Source of the DNA: Dimorphilus gyrociliatus
Lineage: Eukaryota; Animalia; Annelida
Reading direction: 5' to 3'
Assembly (NCBI GenBank): GCA_904063045.1
Contig: CAJFCJ010000020.1
Span: 1,356,916 to 1,420,915 of the forward strand
DNA: 64,000 nucleotides
Part shown: positions 25,747-56,441 of the stretch, in pieces
Layout of the letters: each line of letters starts with the position of its first letter
How positions within the stretch are numbered: position 1 is the stretch's first letter
Notes under the pieces: generated by a model
What the model was told of the DNA's origin: nothing
The model's database searches: none
The model's input: the letters and a program-made list of their open reading frames with translations, nothing else
Translations under genes and position numbers: made by a program

Positions 25747-26898
25747 TAACTTTTATACCATACAGAATCATAACTTTTGATACTCCAATGTTATCTCTGT
25801 AAAAACTCTTCAGTAATAAAACCAGAAATGATTAATGTTTATATCTTGGCTTCAATCTTTATCATAATAAATTTATTGTTAGAGTGTTAACAAGATTAAG
25901 GAATCGGTTAAAAATAAATTAGTTCGGGTCTAAACTAAATATCTAAAAAAAATCATATAAATGTACATATTAGGCATAGAAATTACAATAAATTGTATAT
26001 CTCGTAGATATTCAATAGAAATAGCCTATTAAGTAAACGTAGGGGGCTAAAAATGGTATGACTAAATAATTCCATTGTTAATAAATGAAAGTATCAAGGA
26101 TAGATAGAGGTTGAAAAAAAAACTACACATATTTTCATTCGCAACCGTTACCTAGTGAAATAACATCGTTAAATAAACTTTTATTCTTTATACATAGACC
26201 TAATTGAATTCGCATACATAAGTATTCAGCAATGAAAATATTTTAACAAACTATATTGCGTTAAGCGTCTAAATATATATACAGGAGAACCCATCTATTT
26301 ATAGTATCATTTTAAAAAAATATCTCTCTTCGTCACACCATCTTAATCATCATCATCTCTTATTATTATTCTTTGATCTTGCATGGAATGAAAGCTTTTA
26401 TTATATCAAAAATTTCTTCTCATATAAACCCATAAAATAATAATAATAGTTAAAATAAAACGGTTGACCCCTACGACACGATACCACACAACACTAAATA
26501 GCATGTGTTCTCTGTCACAATCAACTTATCTATGAGTACGGTCATTTAAGATGATTCGTGACGATAAAGCTTAGACATTGAAATAGCATTAGAATGCTAT
26601 TAGTAATTGAGAGATTTATTAAAGTTGTTAATTTTAATATCATCCAGGATCCGTTTTTGGCACGTAAAAGCTATCTAGCATTATCACTAAATTATCTTGT
26701 ATTAAGTCTTTAAGTTTATTAATAATTGAAACGTTAGTTAGTATAAACGTTTTATTTTCGTTTTATATTTGATTAGTCTTCAATATTAACAACAATTACT
26801 AATCGTAAATAGTCAACAATTTGTTTGCAGTTGTATATTGGTAGTATCTATAGCAGCGGCCTTCTCATTGGTTCGTATGGTTGCAGTTGAATTCCAAA

Positions 26899-29800
26899 AT
26901 GGCGGAGAGAGTGAAGGTAGCTGTACGTGTGCGACCATTTATATCCTTTTATGAAATTAATTATATGTTTATATTTCTTATACATAATTGCTTTATATAA
27001 AAGTTTAATTACTGATTAAAATTACGTAATAGCATTCTGTTAATTAGCCTTTCAACTAGTTCTTAAAAAAACTTCATTCAACTGGCGGGAAGATTAACGT
27101 CTGTCTATAAAAAAAGTTGGAAATTGTATATATTCAATGATTTGTAGTAAATTTGCATAAATTTAAACAAAAACCTCCTTAACTCGCATTCTTACAATGA
27201 ACGCGAAAAAAAGCGAAATGCCAAACTGGTTATTGATATGAAAGGGAATCTTACCTATATTTCGGATCCCAACAACAAAAGTAACAAAAAGGATTTCGCT
27301 TTCGATTACTCTTACTGGTCTCATGACGGTTTCAAGGAGGAGAAAAATGGTTATCTATCACCAGAAAGTGCTGCATATGCTGATCAGGTTTGTATGTTTT
27401 ATTCTTTACTTTCTTTTCTATCATAATTGTCTGTTGTTTGTTTCGCTTATAAAAGATTTATAAATATTACTGTCATCGTCAATTGTTCAGTAGGCCTATT
27501 ATTAAAATGGTTTTGTTTTTTTAGTTAAAGTTCAACAAGCTTTCTATATGAAAGACTTAAAAAAAAATAGATTTTACCTCTGTGAAAACAAGTAATTAAA
27601 ATTAGGCATAAAATTATTGATTTAAATAGGAAAAACGGAAAAAAACGAGAGAGAAAGAAGACTAGTAAATGAATCTTATAAGATAAATATTTAAATATTG
27701 AAATATCTCTTTTTCGTATTTGCATTTATACATAATGCTATATTGTAAAATAATCGAATTATTTATGATTATTGCAAACAATAGACTAAGTCATCAATGT
27801 TTGTTATAGAAAAAAGTCTTTGATGACTTGGGTAAAGGAGTTTTAGAAAATGCTTGGAGTGGTTTCAATTGCTCATTATTTGCCTATGGACAAACCGGAT
27901 CTGGAAAATCGTACTCAATGGTTGGATATGGAAATAATAAAGGTATGAAATCTAAACAACATCAATTGTTTAGTTCTCTTTGAGTGTCCTTAAACGAATG
28001 GAAAAATATATATATTGTTTTTTAGGTATTGTCCCTATTGTTTGTGAAAAATTATTTCAAGAGATCGAAGGCAAGAGAGAGAAAGCAAAAGATAGTGAAT
28101 ATCAAGTTGTTTTCTCTATGATAGAAATTTATAATGAACAGGCAAGAGATCTTTTGAATCCAGCATCATTTAAAGTTAAAGGAGGTTTAAAAGTGAGAGA
28201 AAATCCCACAAAAGGACTTTTCTTTGGTGAGTTTTTTTGTACAATGATTGATCTTGTTCTGATTAATTTGCATTGTGTATTTTCTTTTTTATCGATTTGT
28301 AGTCGATGGACTGAAAGAACTACCAGTTAATAGCTATCAATCTATTGAATCAAAGATGACAGAGGGAACTAAAAATCGAACAGTTGCTTCCACAAACATG
28401 AATGCGACTTCTTCCAGAGCTCATACTGTCATTGGTATAAAATTTACGCAAAAAACACCAAATGCTTCTGGTCAGAGTATGACTAGGGTTTCGGTCATAA
28501 ATCTAGTTGATTTAGCCGGAAGTGAAAGAGCAAATTCCACGGGAGCAGAGGGTGATCGTTTGAAAGAAGGCGCCTCTATTAATCAATCCCTCAGCAATTT
28601 AGGAAATTGTATAAATGCTTTGGCGGAAAATAAAAAGAATAGTAAGTTGTAATTGTTCTTCGTATTCGTTCAAGTACAACAAGAGTATAATACCCCAATA
28701 TTTATAGTTCCATTTAGAAATTCTGCACTTACCAAACTACTTAAGAATGCTTTGGGTGGAAATTCAAAGACTGTTATGATAGCTGCTCTATCACCTGCTG
28801 ATATTAATTATGACGAAACTTTGTCAACTCTAAGATTTGGTAGGTGAAATATCATCTTACTTTACATGATAATAACGATGTCTCACCACACTAGCTGATA
28901 GAGCAAAGAGCATTAAAACCAAAGCTGTCATTAACGAATCTCCTACTGATAAGCTTATTAGGGAACTTAAAGAAGAAAATGAGAGATTAAAGAAAATGGT
29001 GGAAGGTAAGGGTGGTGTACCTGCAGGAGTTGAAAATAAAGAGGAATATGAAAATATGCAAAGAGAACTAGAAGCTAATAAGAAAGAAATTGAAGATATG
29101 GAAAAAAGTTATCAAGAAAAGTTAGCAGCAATAGAAGCTGCTGCGAAAGAGCAAGCCAAAGAGGCTGCTGCAGATAAAAAGAAATCTGAGCAAAGAAAAG
29201 TTATGCCACATCTTTGGAATTTAAATGAAGATCCAGCTCTTACTGGAATTGTATGCCATTTTACTCCACAAGGAGACTCTAAAATAGGAAACAATAAGGG
29301 AAAGAATCCTGATATAATTCTTAGTGGAATGGGGTAAGTTAACTACGATCTATCCTTTTGGGTTGTTAATTGTAAATATTCTATGTAGGATGCTTCCTGA
29401 ACATGCAGTTATATCCAACTCAAAAGATCAGAAGATTATTTTGAAACCATGCGCAGGAGCTAAAATATGCCTTAATGGTAATGAAATAAAGGATAAAAAA
29501 GAATTACATCATAACGACAGAGTTCAATTCGGAGCAAACATGTTATTCGTATTCCACCATCCGAAGGATTATACTGCTCTAGCAAAGAAGAAGAAAGTTC
29601 CTCCAGAACCTACTTTTGAACAAGCCAGAGATGAAATTTCACAAAATTCTGGAATCAACAAGATCTTAGATGATAAGAGTAGGTTTAAACCACTACAAAC
29701 TTATATTTTCCTACTGTTTATAACAATTTTTCATGTGTATTTTGTTTTCTAAAATAATTTTAGTGGACCAAATGCTACAACAAGATTTGATGGAAATTTG

Positions 29801-31706
29801 GCCTATGCTAAACGAAGCGAACATGATGAGTGAGGAATTAGATAAACAAGTTAAATTTGAGATAGCGTTGATTGCTCCCCAAGCTGTTGGAAAGAAATCT
29901 GGAAGAACTGAGGTAATTTTGTTAGAGGTAATTGATTTAACAAGTACTTACTAAGTTGTTCAATCAAAAGATTAAAGTTAAAGTTAAAGATCTACCGACC
30001 GGCAACGAGTTCATGTGGGATAAAAATACTTTCACAAACAGAAAATACATGATGCAAGAAATGTATAACAATTACATCGATGGCGATGCTGATTGGGATA
30101 AACCTAAAAATGAAGATCCTTTTTGGGAAGATCCCAACAATCCTTATCTAATTGGAACAGCTCATGTTCATATGATGGCAGTTGCTTATAACTTTCACAC
30201 AGATGAAACTTTCTTAATTACCGATTATAGAGGAATAGATCAAGGTCAATTATCTTGCAAATTACTAATTACTTCGAAGAACGGGAAAGTTCTTTCCGAT
30301 AAGGAGTTAGATGAAATTGCAATAGAGGATCCATCTCGTGATCTCGTTGGTTGTTGTTTAAATTTTAAACTAGAAATTCCCTGTGTCCGTGGTATAAATA
30401 AAAAATATTCTCAAGTAAATATGATTTATGCTTCATATCTGAATATTTATTCAACTCTACTATTTATAAATATTCTAACAGGTTTATTGCGCATATCAAT
30501 TTTACATTGATGATAAAAAGGAACAAACAAGGGAAGTTGGAGGAACAATTAACCCTGACTTTAATTTTTCTAAGGCTTACGCTTTTGATCCAGCTACTCC
30601 TCAGGTACAATAAGATTTTTTTAGTCTTGTATTCGCTTTTCAAAAAAGTTCACCAAAATTTAATTAAAAGCTTGTACAATACCTCGAACAAGAAACGTTA
30701 GTAATTGAAGTATGGGGAAGACAAAAGTCCAGTGATGGAAATAATTCGGGATTAAGTACCAGAGAGCTGAGCTTGAAAGACCGAAAAGGCGCGGCAGCAA
30801 AGGCAACAGGAAAAGGAAAAGGAGGAGCTAGAGCTGTAAGTACCCCCCCCCCACCCGTTTCTATCCTTATTCTTATTTACTTAGCATGATTCTTGTAAGA
30901 ACAATCATACAACTCTAAACCAGTAGACTCTATTTAGATTTAACATCATAATATAAAGTAAAATAGTTTCTATATTATCTATACTGTATATCGATTGTAT
31001 ATTCATTCAATTAGGATGACAAGGAAGATGATGCGGTAAGGCAAAAAGTTTTTTTTACTGAAGCCTTAAAAAAAAGACACAATAAGAAAATGATTAATCA
31101 CCAATTGGCTTCAGATTATTTTGTGTATATTTTAATTGACTCTTTTCATTAAGTTCACGTTTTATTGTTAATTTATAATTTGATCACCATTTTTTTGATT
31201 TTGAACTGATCCTTTATCACATGTTGTCAAAATTACATCCTGTAAATTTATACTTTTTTATATCAATATTAAAATGATTGAAATTTACAATTTTATTTAT
31301 AAAATTTCTCACTTACAGAGCTCTAAAAGTAACATTGAAGCTATGACATATAAGCGTCGTATGGAAAGAGCTGAACAGAAATTGGTAAGATTTTTTTTTC
31401 TGTTTATTCATCAACAAAAAATTTTACGTTTTTCCATACTTTTATTTCTTTAGAGAAAACTTGCTAATATTGTTGAAGATGCTAAATCGAAAAATGCAAA
31501 GGATATTGATGTAAATATCTTGATTGTATAGAATTAAGTACAAAATTAATTAATCTACGTTAAAAATACTATAGATTTCGAAAATTGAAGAAGTTATCAT
31601 GGCTGGATATAAATTTAAAGCTGCTGCAAATGTAGTGAAACAAGTTTTGAAAGCGAAGAATAACAATATGGGGACTGCTACTTCGCAAGCTTGCTCATTG
31701 CAATGA
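26899..31706 (+). CDS. Kinesin-3 family motor, KIF28-like (motor, FHA, C2-like tail); multi-exon
   Basis: [10 protein letters not shown]|[50 protein letters not shown] and an FHA region. Ends SQACSLQ*. Confidence 0.9.
26941..27195 (+). other. U12-type (minor spliceosome) AT-AC intron, 255 nt
   Basis: 5' end ATATCCTTTT, branch site TCCTTAAC at 27176-27183, 3' end AC. Removal gives the conserved VRVRPF|NEREK in frame. Confidence 0.93.
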
Positions 31707-39298: not shown

Positions 39299-39454
39299 AT
39301 GGCCGCACATAAAACTTTCCGCATTAAGCGTATTTTGGCTAAGAAACAGAAGCAAAATCGCCCTGTACCACAATGGGTTAGAATGAAAACTGGAAACACC
39401 ATCCGTTACAACTCCAAGAGAAGACATTGGAGAAGAACTAAGCTGAAATTGTAA
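39299..39454 (+). CDS. RPL39: 60S ribosomal protein L39 (eL39), 51 aa, intronless
   Basis: [51 protein letters not shown]. Below the ORF-track length cutoff. Confidence 0.98.
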
Positions 39455-40691: not shown

Positions 40692-40819
40692 ATTGTTTGA
40701 TACTAAGAAGTTGGCGGGTCGTTGTTAACTAGTTGTTTACAAATGGCGTAAATATTCAAGAGGTCTTCCATTTTCCACTTCAAAATCAGTCTTCCGCTAA
40801 CATATTATGTAAGATTAAG

Positions 40820-41920
40820 ATGGCAAGTCCTCGAACTAATGACTTAGCTGTTGAACGCTATTCGGGGGAAACTTATTCGCGAGGTCCTTCAAGAATAGAT
40901 GTTCTTGAAAACAGAATCATTGCAACTGAACGTTCAACAACAGCACTTTTGGACAGAGCACTTAAAATTAAAGAAGATGTCATCGCTAACTTGAATTACA
41001 GTCATGGAACTTGGCAAGAAGAACGAAATGCAAGAGTATCACTACAGGAACATATCAGGACAATCACTGATGCCGTACGAAAGTTAGGATCAGATATCCA
41101 AGAACTAAATTCCCAAATTCGATCAAGAGATGGAACTGTTGAAGGTTCCCAAAATGCTGTTCGTAATCTAGAAATGGCTCATGTTGCTGGGGTTACCGAT
41201 CTAAAAGGCAGAGTCGTTAGATGTGATACAAATATATCTAGATTGGCGACCGACTTAAAAACATGCTATGATCAGCTAAGAAGTACGAACAGTGAACAAA
41301 ATACAACAAATGCGAAATTGGCAGAGAAATTTAATATACAGGATCAAAAAATTTCTCAACTGGCAGCCAAAATTGAAAAAATAACTGGTGAACAAACTAT
41401 GCATCTAAGAAGAGTTGAAGGTGATTCAACCCATCAATTATCTTCTTTAGAAGCAAACACAAGACAATTGATTCAGGAAACGCGTTCTCAAGTTAATACC
41501 TACAGGTCAATGGAAGCCGGAGAAAGAGATAAATTAGAAGCAAGACTAATGGCTCTTATCGAACGATCAAACCATGATAGAGACTCTCGCGTTGATACCT
41601 GGCAAAAACGTGCCGAAGAGGCTGTTAATAATGTGCAGAAACGATTGACAAGACTCGAAGAAGATAACTCCAGAGATAAAGAAAGACAGCAATTGTTGGT
41701 GCAACAGCTGGAAAATAAAATACAGTCTTCCGTACAATCTCAAAATAGATTACAAAAGGAGGAAATGGCGAAATTAAAAAGGGAGGTCAGGGATGGCTTC
41801 ATCGCTCTCAGAGAAGCAATTGATCACATGAAGCAAGTGTTAGATGGAAAAAGGAAGTTATTAGAAGAACAGATAAGAAAAGAAATAGGACAAATACGCA
41901 AAATGGTTGTCCTAATATAA
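40820..41920 (+). CDS. FAM81A: FAM81 family coiled-coil protein, single exon
   Basis: LENRIIATERSTTALLDRALKIKEDVI, LQEHIRTITDAVRKL, LKGRVVRCDTNI and IGQIRKMVVLI*. Confidence 0.75.
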   Translation: MASPRTNDLAVERYSGETYSRGPSRIDVLENRIIATERSTTALLDRALKIKEDVIANLNYSHGTWQEERNARVSLQEHIRTITDAVRKLGSDIQELNSQIRSRDGTVEGSQNAVRNLEMAHVAGVTDLKGRVVRCDTNISRLATDLKTCYDQLRSTNSEQNTTNAKLAEKFNIQDQKISQLAAKIEKITGEQTMHLRRVEGDSTHQLSSLEANTRQLIQETRSQVNTYRSMEAGERDKLEARLMALIERSNHDRDSRVDTWQKRAEEAVNNVQKRLTRLEEDNSRDKERQQLLVQQLENKIQSSVQSQNRLQKEEMAKLKREVRDGFIALREAIDHMKQVLDGKRKLLEEQIRKEIGQIRKMVVLI

Positions 41921-55968: not shown

Positions 55969-56441
55969 ATTCTCTGATGTCGATATTTCCTAAAAACTGT
56001 AGGAGAAAGGCCCAAGATTAATGCTTTTAATCGTATCTATATTTGTATCAGGAAATAATATCCTCCAAAAAAAAAAGAAATTTCTAATATGGCCTTGAAA
56101 ATCGGTGAAACTATAAATTTCTTTCATCATAACAATCACATGAACGATAATATGTGAATTTTTACACGTGTGAATTTTATGTATATACCTTAACAAAAAA
56201 AAATAAACCGGCTTCAACAAATAGATAAAATGTATTTTTAATGAAATTGTTTCTCAACGCGAAAGTAGTGCCATCTATGACAGAAAAGCGTAGGACACGA
56301 TCAATTGCAAGCAACCTTAAAAAAAGCATATTGAATTCGCCACGTCGTCTTTTCTCAAATCACCGAGGGGTGTTTTAAAACTTATTATCATTTCTAGTTA
56401 TTAGTACTATTTAATCGAAACTCGGATAAGAAACTAATAAA

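What the first reader, a model, noticed from the sequence alone, without database searches (positions are those of the whole stretch)
26941..27195. Textbook U12 AT-AC intron retained in a highly compacted genome
No GT-AG solution joins kinesin VRVRPF to NEREK. The intervening 255 nt starts ATATCCTTTT, has TCCTTAAC 12 nt before the end, and ends in AC, matching the minor-spliceosome consensus. It implies this organism keeps U11/U12/U4atac/U6atac snRNAs, which are lost in some reduced lineages such as C. elegans. The intron is 4-5 times the local typical length and is the first intron, so it could be rate-limiting. GT-AG-only annotators would mis-model this N-terminus.
Basis: partly seen in the sequence, partly recalled or inferred. 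Interest (0 to 1): 0.75.

Follow-up and report, generated by a model that had tools for sequence, protein, structure and literature searches.

The report
Ancient minor-spliceosome intron in kinesin gene
The first coding intron of a KIF28/KLP-6-type kinesin gene in this small annelid genome is a genuine AT-AC intron of the rare minor-spliceosome (U12) kind; the same intron sits at the same spot in a brachiopod and a sea urchin, so it is real and old but ordinary biology.

Summary
Window 26941-27195 (255 nt) starts ATATCCTTTT, carries TCCTTAAC 12 nt before its end, and ends AC. It lies in phase 0 between [14 protein letters not shown] and NEREKK of a kinesin-3 gene whose closest solved relative is C. 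elegans KLP-6. No in-frame GT/GC-AG pairing keeps both conserved peptides.

The genome (77.9 Mb; earlier notes call it the annelid Dimorphilus gyrociliatus) has full-length U12, U11, U4atac and U6atac genes. All four score above Rfam's gathering thresholds.

The same AT-AC U12-type intron sits at the same codon boundary in Lingula anatina (1960 nt), in Diadema antillarum (2189 nt) and in a paralogue in this genome (95 nt). Most unspliced homologue fragments show its trace as well, so it is at least as old as bilaterians.

Larue & Roy 2023 (PMC10639083) already surveyed minor introns in this species and reported about 80% lost. The scan's first readers flagged U12 introns in at least six other genes of this genome. 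The length claim is roughly right (3.9 times the 66-nt median), but the next, GT-AG, intron is longer (422 nt). "Rate-limiting" and "mis-annotated" could not be tested.

Verdict: real, textbook, low interest.

The parts
26899..26940 (+). Coding exon 1 of a KIF28/KLP-6-type kinesin-3 gene: [14 protein letters not shown], the start codon plus strand beta-1 of the motor
   Evidence: Translation. An in-frame stop lies upstream at 26851-26853. The 14 residues fill the N-terminus missing from exon 2, which aligns from residue 17 of KLP-6 (7wrg_A) and residue 16 of KIF1A.
26941..27195 (+). U12-type (minor-spliceosome) AT-AC intron, 255 nt, phase 0. Its length is a multiple of 3, but it contains in-frame stops, so retention would truncate the protein
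   Evidence: Conserved in type and position in L009, L005 and L014.
26941..26949 (+). 5' splice site ATATCCTTT, a 9/9 match to the U12 AT-AC consensus
   Evidence: ATATCCTTTT is invariant in alignment A1. Predicted duplexes with the genome's own U11 and U6atac 5' regions are.
27176..27183 (+). Branch-site element TCCTTAAC. 12 nt separate it from the intron end, so the two A residues are 13-14 nt from the last intron base
   Evidence: The duplex with the genome's own U12 (GAGUAAGGA region) leaves one bulged A, at -11.8 kcal/mol. CCTTAAC is invariant in alignment A2.
27194..27195 (+). 3' terminal dinucleotide AC
   Evidence: invariant in A2.
27196..27387 (+). Coding exon 2 ([12 protein letters not shown]...AAYADQ, 64 aa)
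   Evidence: Best solved relative is 7wrg_A (KLP-6), residues 17-80, E 5.9e-17; KIF1A matches at residues 16-62, E about 1e-7.
27388..27809 (+). Intron 2, GT-AG, 422 nt, the longest intron of the gene
27810..30835 (+). Exons 3-12 with nine GT-AG introns of 55-85 nt. They encode the rest of the kinesin motor, the Kinesin_assoc region, the FHA domain and the KIF1B domain. The C-terminal end beyond 30835 is not resolved (a further exon probably starts at 31015)
   Evidence: Pfam hits exon by exon. Boundaries and open frames were checked exon by exon.

Best explanation
Window 26941-27195 is a genuine U12-dependent AT-AC intron, the first coding intron of a KIF28/KLP-6-type kinesin-3 gene.

Inferred mechanism, from established knowledge of minor splicing: the U11/U12 di-snRNP binds the 5' splice site ATATCCTTT through U11 and the branch site TCCTTAAC through U12, which bulges a branch adenosine about 13 nt from the 3' end. 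U4atac/U6atac.U5 then joins, U6atac replaces U11 at the 5' splice site, and the two transesterifications join codon F14 to codon N15 in phase 0.

The intron was inherited from at least the bilaterian ancestor. It predates a duplication of the gene family, and it is one of the minority of minor introns that survived the loss of about 80% of them reported for this species.
For: Shown here:
- The 5' splice site, branch site, spacing and termini all match consensus.
- No GT/GC-AG pairing keeps the conserved VRVRPF|NEREK join. In KLP-6 and KIF1A these residues are contiguous, and exon 2 aligns from the residue right after RPF.
- The other 10 introns of the gene are ordinary GT-AG.
- The genome has one full-length copy each of U12 (91.7 bits), U11 (113), U4atac (63.9) and U6atac (87.6), all above gathering scores. 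Their recognition sequences are intact and can pair with this intron's sites.
- The orthologous intron is AT-AC with ATATCCTTTT and (T/A)CCTTAAC in Lingula anatina (L009, 1960 nt) and Diadema antillarum (L005, 2189 nt). The organisms were identified through.
- A metagenome contig has TCCTTAAC, then 9 nt, then AC before the exon (L010).
- A paralogue in this genome has the same intron at 95 nt (L014).
- The intronic signals are invariant in alignments A1 and A2.
- Of 49 unspliced homologue fragments, 37 have His or Tyr (codons that can end in AC) just before the exon. 30 of 41 long enough to judge read LN or LT, which is CTTAAC in frame, 2-5 codons upstream.

Published: this species keeps a reduced set of minor introns (PMC10639083).
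Against: The His/Tyr signature in fragments is compatible with AC but does not prove it, since those codons can also end in T. Scans for minor-spliceosome-specific proteins were inconclusive: the zf-U11-48K domain was found at two loci but is not specific, and the SNRNP25 ubiquitin-like domain was not found in a six-frame scan where the control also rang nowhere.
Confidence: 0.93

Rival explanations
1. It is a U2-type AT-AC intron, one of the rare AT-AC introns removed by the major spliceosome.
For: Only the AT-AC termini themselves. Such introns exist in animals (established knowledge).
Against: U2-type AT-AC introns lack the ATATCCTT donor and the TCCTTAAC branch element close to the 3' end; both are perfect here. 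There is no polypyrimidine tract upstream of the branch element, where the sequence is A-rich. The intronic U12 signals are invariant across an annelid, a brachiopod and an echinoderm.
Confidence: 0.03
2. Exon 1 is not used. The protein starts further downstream (for example at Met15 of exon 2) or from another upstream exon, and the U12-like motifs are coincidence.
For: Each motif alone occurs at chance frequency in the window. Many library proteins start at the equivalent internal Met, but these are ORF calls on unspliced contigs.
Against: Exon 1 encodes exactly the conserved beta-1 strand [10 protein letters not shown] behind an ATG, at the length expected from KLP-6 and KIF1A. The same two-exon arrangement with the same intron signals is annotated in Lingula and Diadema and recurs in a paralogue. 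No AG acceptor is available upstream of exon 2 within the open frame.
Confidence: 0.02
3. It is a real U12 intron that is also kept for a purpose. Slow or regulated minor splicing, or retention leading to the in-frame stop, would throttle expression of this kinesin, as the first reader suggests with 'rate-limiting'.
For: The intron survives in two paralogues although about 80% of minor introns were lost in this species. The AT-AC subtype is kept across bilaterians. Retention would meet an in-frame stop at 26998-27000. U12 introns are spliced more slowly in some systems (established knowledge).
Against: Nothing here measures splicing rate or retention. A third paralogue has no intron at this position (L015), and another animal genome lacks it (L006), so it is dispensable. 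Larue & Roy argue that neutral processes explain much of minor intron evolution (PMC10639083). No structured RNA was found in or around the intron.
Confidence: 0.12

Closest known systems
U12-type AT-AC introns of the minor spliceosome (classic examples: human NOP2/P120 intron F and the AT-AC introns of voltage-gated sodium channel genes)
   Same: The /ATATCCTTT donor, the TCCTTAAC branch element 10-15 nt from the 3' end, the terminal AC, no polypyrimidine tract, dependence on U11/U12/U4atac/U6atac (all encoded in this genome), and deep positional conservation.
   Different: Nothing of kind. It is another host gene (a KIF28/KLP-6-type kinesin) in a small annelid genome. I found no paper naming this gene as a minor-intron host.
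Minor-intron complement of Dimorphilus gyrociliatus as surveyed by Larue & Roy 2023 (PMC10639083)
   Same: Same species (by earlier notes) and same class of intron. The paper reports that the species keeps a minor spliceosome and about one fifth of its ancestral minor introns.
   Different: The paper gives no gene-level list in the text held here. Whether this particular intron was in their set depends on the public annotation, which I could not see.
C. elegans KLP-6 (PDB 7wrg) and the KIF28 subfamily of kinesin-3
   Same: Exon 2 is most similar to KLP-6 (E 5.9e-17, against about 1e-7 for KIF1A). The domain order is motor, Kinesin_assoc, FHA, KIF1B.
   Different: C. elegans has no minor spliceosome (established knowledge), so its gene cannot carry this intron. 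Subfamily membership here rests on best hits, not on a tree.
U2-type AT-AC introns
   Same: The AT and AC termini.
   Different: These lack the U12 donor and branch consensus, which are perfect and conserved here.

Membership tests
U12-type (minor-spliceosome) intron, AT-AC subtype | 5' splice site consensus /RTATCCTTT | tested here: met
   ATATCCTTT at 26941-26949, 9 of 9.
U12-type (minor-spliceosome) intron, AT-AC subtype | Branch-site consensus TCCTTAAC close to the 3' splice site (about 10-15 nt) | tested here: met
   TCCTTAAC at 27176-27183, with 12 nt to the intron end.
U12-type (minor-spliceosome) intron, AT-AC subtype | AT...AC termini, and no GT-AG alternative that keeps the coding frame and the conserved residues | tested here: met
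   Enumeration: every GT/GC-AG in-frame pairing deletes conserved residues.
U12-type (minor-spliceosome) intron, AT-AC subtype | The genome encodes U11, U12, U4atac and U6atac snRNAs with intact recognition sequences | tested here: met
   Rfam models RF00548, RF00007, RF00618 and RF00619 each gave one full-length match above gathering score. Sequences are and duplexes.
U12-type (minor-spliceosome) intron, AT-AC subtype | Orthologous introns at the same position are also U12-type | tested here: met
   Lingula anatina, Diadema antillarum, a metagenome contig and a paralogue on contig C10. The intron is absent, not converted, in L006 and L015.
U12-type (minor-spliceosome) intron, AT-AC subtype | Removal at these boundaries in vivo, dependent on the minor spliceosome | not testable with these tools
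   No RNA-seq or cDNA of this animal is reachable; records of this genome are withheld.
U12-type (minor-spliceosome) intron, AT-AC subtype | Minor-spliceosome-specific proteins are encoded (65K, 48K, 35K, 25K and others) | tested here: inconclusive
   The zf-U11-48K domain was found at two loci but also occurs in other proteins. The SNRNP25 ubiquitin-like domain gave no hit, in a scan whose control also rang nowhere.
Kinesin-3, KIF28/KLP-6 subfamily | Kinesin motor followed by an FHA domain and a KIF1B-type domain; closest to KLP-6/KIF28 rather than to KIF1, KIF13 or KIF16 | tested here: inconclusive
   The domains were found exon by exon. The best solved relative of exon 2 is KLP-6. No phylogeny was built and the C-terminus was not resolved.

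The most novel reading that the evidence does not exclude
The AT-AC intron at the first coding junction of KIF28-type kinesins is a subtype-stable minor intron found across bilaterians. It is actively kept in two paralogues of a genome that shed about 80% of its minor introns, because it couples expression of this kinesin to minor-spliceosome activity through slow splicing or retention into an in-frame stop.
Probability: 0.1. Interest if true: 0.45.

Novelty: new member of a known kind. Interest (0 to 1): 0.2.

Why it matters
It matters little beyond correct annotation. The intron confirms, together with the four snRNA genes, that this compact annelid genome runs a working minor spliceosome, and that was already published at species level. 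The modest additions are three: KIF28/KLP-6-type kinesins carry an ancient AT-AC intron at their first coding junction, shared by annelid, brachiopod and sea urchin. In this genome one paralogue holds it at 255 nt, a second at 95 nt, and a third has no intron at that position. Gene finders must allow AT-AC introns to recover the 14-residue N-terminal exon, which encodes part of the motor core.

Tried and rejected
- **Other U12 introns in the window.** A loose scan gave two further short candidates, 56058-56208 (+) and 3982-3630 (-). Neither has coding flanks, so both were rejected as chance.
- **Genome-wide count of short U12 introns.** The pattern RTATCCTTT N{15,45} TCCTTAAC gave 3 matches against 3 in the control, which is uninformative.
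- **Structured RNA in introns 1-2 and the 5' flank.** Rfam at a permissive threshold found nothing; the whole window at gathering threshold also gave nothing.
- **Public annotation and organism name.** An exact look-up of the neighbouring RPL39 product found nothing, because records of this genome are left out.
- **Literature naming Kif28 as a minor-intron host.** Zero papers. The supplement of PMC10639083 held here has no species or gene table.
- **Look-ups without genomic DNA.** Five of the eleven protein look-ups on homologues gave none: P0029, P0059, P0010 and P0101 were not on record, and the file for P0001 was too large. Two more were intronless or transcript contigs, L007 and L008.
- **Minor-spliceosome protein domains.** Inconclusive.
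- **Joined spliced protein.** It was not searched or folded. All searches used single exons by reference. The only junction peptides computed were local, in the script, to test alternative splice pairings.

Full report
**What is in the sequence**

On the + strand an ATG at 26899 opens 14 codons, [14 protein letters not shown], ending at 26940. The next bases are ATATCCTTTT. At 27176-27183 lies TCCTTAAC, followed by 12 nt that end in AC at 27195. From 27196 the frame reads [18 protein letters not shown]...[26 protein letters not shown] up to a GT donor at 27388.

**More than chance**

Each motif alone occurs at about the chance rate in the window: RTATCCTTT 4 times against 2.5 expected, TCCTTAAC twice against 2.3. 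This is the only place where a donor motif, a branch motif, the right spacing and an AC line up on one strand between two open coding segments.

I enumerated every in-frame GT-AG, GC-AG and AT-AC pairing between the start codon and exon 2. There are 15 GT/GC-AG solutions. All use acceptors at 27213 or later, inside conserved coding sequence, so they delete NEREKK or more and often the beta-1 strand too. No AG exists between 27148 and 27195. In KLP-6 and KIF1A the RPF and N residues are adjacent, and exon 2 aligns from residue 17 of KLP-6 and residue 16 of KIF1A. That leaves room for exactly the short N-terminal exon.

**The gene**

Scanned exon by exon, the gene encodes a kinesin motor (PF00225 over four exons), Kinesin_assoc, FHA and the KIF1B domain. 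The best solved relative of exon 2 is 7wrg_A, C. elegans KLP-6, at E 5.9e-17, against about 1e-7 for KIF1A. I therefore read it as a KIF28/KLP-6-type kinesin-3. This rests on best hits only; no tree was built.

I fixed 12 exons and 11 introns and checked each exon's frame separately. The intron lengths are 255, 422, 83, 76, 66, 55, 55, 85, 58, 67 and 66 nt. Ten introns are GT-AG, and only intron 1 is AT-AC. The median of the short ones is 66 nt, the same as the published median for Dimorphilus gyrociliatus (PMC7854359). The U12 intron is thus about 3.9 times typical length, but it is not the longest in the gene. Whether it is the first intron of the transcript is unknown, because the 5' UTR was not mapped.

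I did not search or fold the joined protein. All searches used single exons by reference.

**The machinery**

The window's genome is 77.9 Mb in 349 contigs. It holds one full-length match each, all above Rfam gathering scores:

| snRNA | Contig | Score (bits) |
|---|---|---|
| U12 | C19 | 91.7 |
| U11 | C14 | 113 |
| U4atac | C19 | 63.9 |
| U6atac | C1 | 87.6 |

The sequences carry the expected recognition elements: U11 5'-AAAAAGGGC, U12 GAGUAAGGAAAA and U6atac AAGGAGAGA. Predicted duplexes pair U11 and U6atac with the donor. U12 pairs with the branch element with one bulged adenosine, at -11.8 kcal/mol. Scans for two protein domains of the minor spliceosome were inconclusive.

**Comparative evidence**

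A search of the representative protein library with exon 2 gave 578 hits, and the best 150 are KIF28/KLP-6-like. Genomic DNA could be fetched for a few.

- In GCA_001039355.2, Lingula anatina (named in PMC12693507), the intron between VRVRPF and NTREKE is 1960 nt. It starts ATATCCTTTT, then has TCCTTAAC, 9 nt and AC.
- In GCA_040938485.1, Diadema antillarum (PMC13511894), the intron is 2189 nt. It starts ATATCCTTTT, then has ACCTTAAC, 10 nt and AC.
- A metagenome contig (L010) shows TCCTTAAC, 9 nt and AC before the exon.
- One further animal genome, GCA_051911535.1 (organism not identified), has no intron at this position.
- Two hits were transcript-like contigs without introns.

Among 49 library proteins that are ORF calls running from the intron into the exon, 37 have His or Tyr just before the exon's first Asn. 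Those codons can end in AC. Ten have Lys, Gln or Glu, whose codons end in AG. Of 41 fragments long enough to judge, 30 read LN or LT, which is CTTAAC in frame, 2-5 codons upstream.

Within this genome there are three related copies:

- A paralogue on contig C10 has [15 protein letters not shown], then ATATCCTTTT, and ACCTTAAC with 15 nt ending in AC before NKRERARN. The intron is only 95 nt.
- A second paralogue, on C6, has RPF and N contiguous, so it has no intron there.
- A more distant kinesin on C4 also lacks it.

Alignments show ATATCCTTTT, CCTTAAC and the terminal AC invariant while the rest of the intron is free. The intron is therefore at least as old as the protostome-deuterostome ancestor and predates the duplication seen here.

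**Mechanism**

Shown here: the signals, the snRNA genes, the pairing potential and the conservation. Inferred from established knowledge of minor splicing: U11/U12 recognise the donor and branch site as a di-snRNP, U4atac/U6atac.U5 joins, U6atac replaces U11, and F14 is joined to N15 in phase 0. Retention would run into an in-frame stop at 26998-27000. No transcript data were available, so use of the junction in vivo is inferred, with high confidence.

**What is known already**

Larue & Roy 2023 (PMC10639083) surveyed minor introns in over 3000 eukaryotes. They discuss D. gyrociliatus explicitly: it lost about 80% of its minor introns, mainly by deletion rather than conversion. The intron-free C6 paralogue fits that mode, but its ancestry was not tested. 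The genome paper (PMC7854359) does not discuss the minor spliceosome. No paper in the library links Kif28 with U12 or minor introns.

The organism name comes from earlier notes of this scan. It agrees with the genome size and the intron median, but I did not verify it independently. First-stage notes also list U12 introns in NOP2, FARSB, eIF2A, SRSF10, TUSC3 and a PLC-beta gene of this genome, so the scan has found this kind of thing before on other DNA.

**Verdict**

It is an ordinary instance of a known class in a species already known to keep the minor spliceosome. The small additions are its deep conservation in KIF28-type kinesins and the three states of this site among paralogues of one genome: 255 nt, 95 nt and absent. 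The suggestions that it is rate-limiting or mis-annotated remain untested.

Noticed in passing
L014 (G000 contig C10, minus strand; intron at about C10:906418-906512): A paralogous KIF28-like kinesin gene has the same AT-AC U12-type intron at the same codon boundary, but it is only 95 nt long. Minor introns in this genome can therefore be nearly as short as the typical GT-AG intron.
   Followed up: partly
L015 (G000 contig C6, minus strand, around C6:1265533-1265709): A third KIF28-like paralogue reads [22 protein letters not shown] without interruption, inside a 537-codon open frame. It therefore has no intron at this position and few introns in this stretch. It could be an example of minor-intron loss by exact deletion, or a retrocopy.
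   Followed up: no
window 27388-27809: Intron 2 of the kinesin gene is GT-AG and 422 nt, six times the local median and longer than the U12 intron. The genome paper reports that unusually long introns in this species often carry open-chromatin peaks, so introns 1-2 may hold regulatory DNA.
   Followed up: no
window 39299-39454: A single-exon ribosomal protein L39 gene (51 aa, [11 protein letters not shown]...) lies on the + strand.
   Followed up: no
window 40817-41920: A long uninterrupted open frame (about 367 aa from MASPRTNDLAV...), rich in coiled-coil-like sequence, lies on the + strand. That is unusually long for a single exon in this intron-bearing genome.
   Followed up: no
protein library hits (P0021, P0026, P0027, P0028, P0030, P0042, P0139 and others): About one fifth of the unspliced homologue fragments have Lys, Gln or Glu (AG-ending codons) before the exon. 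Several of these still read LN or LT upstream, which suggests AT-AC to GT-AG subtype switches or conversions of this intron in some lineages.
   Followed up: partly
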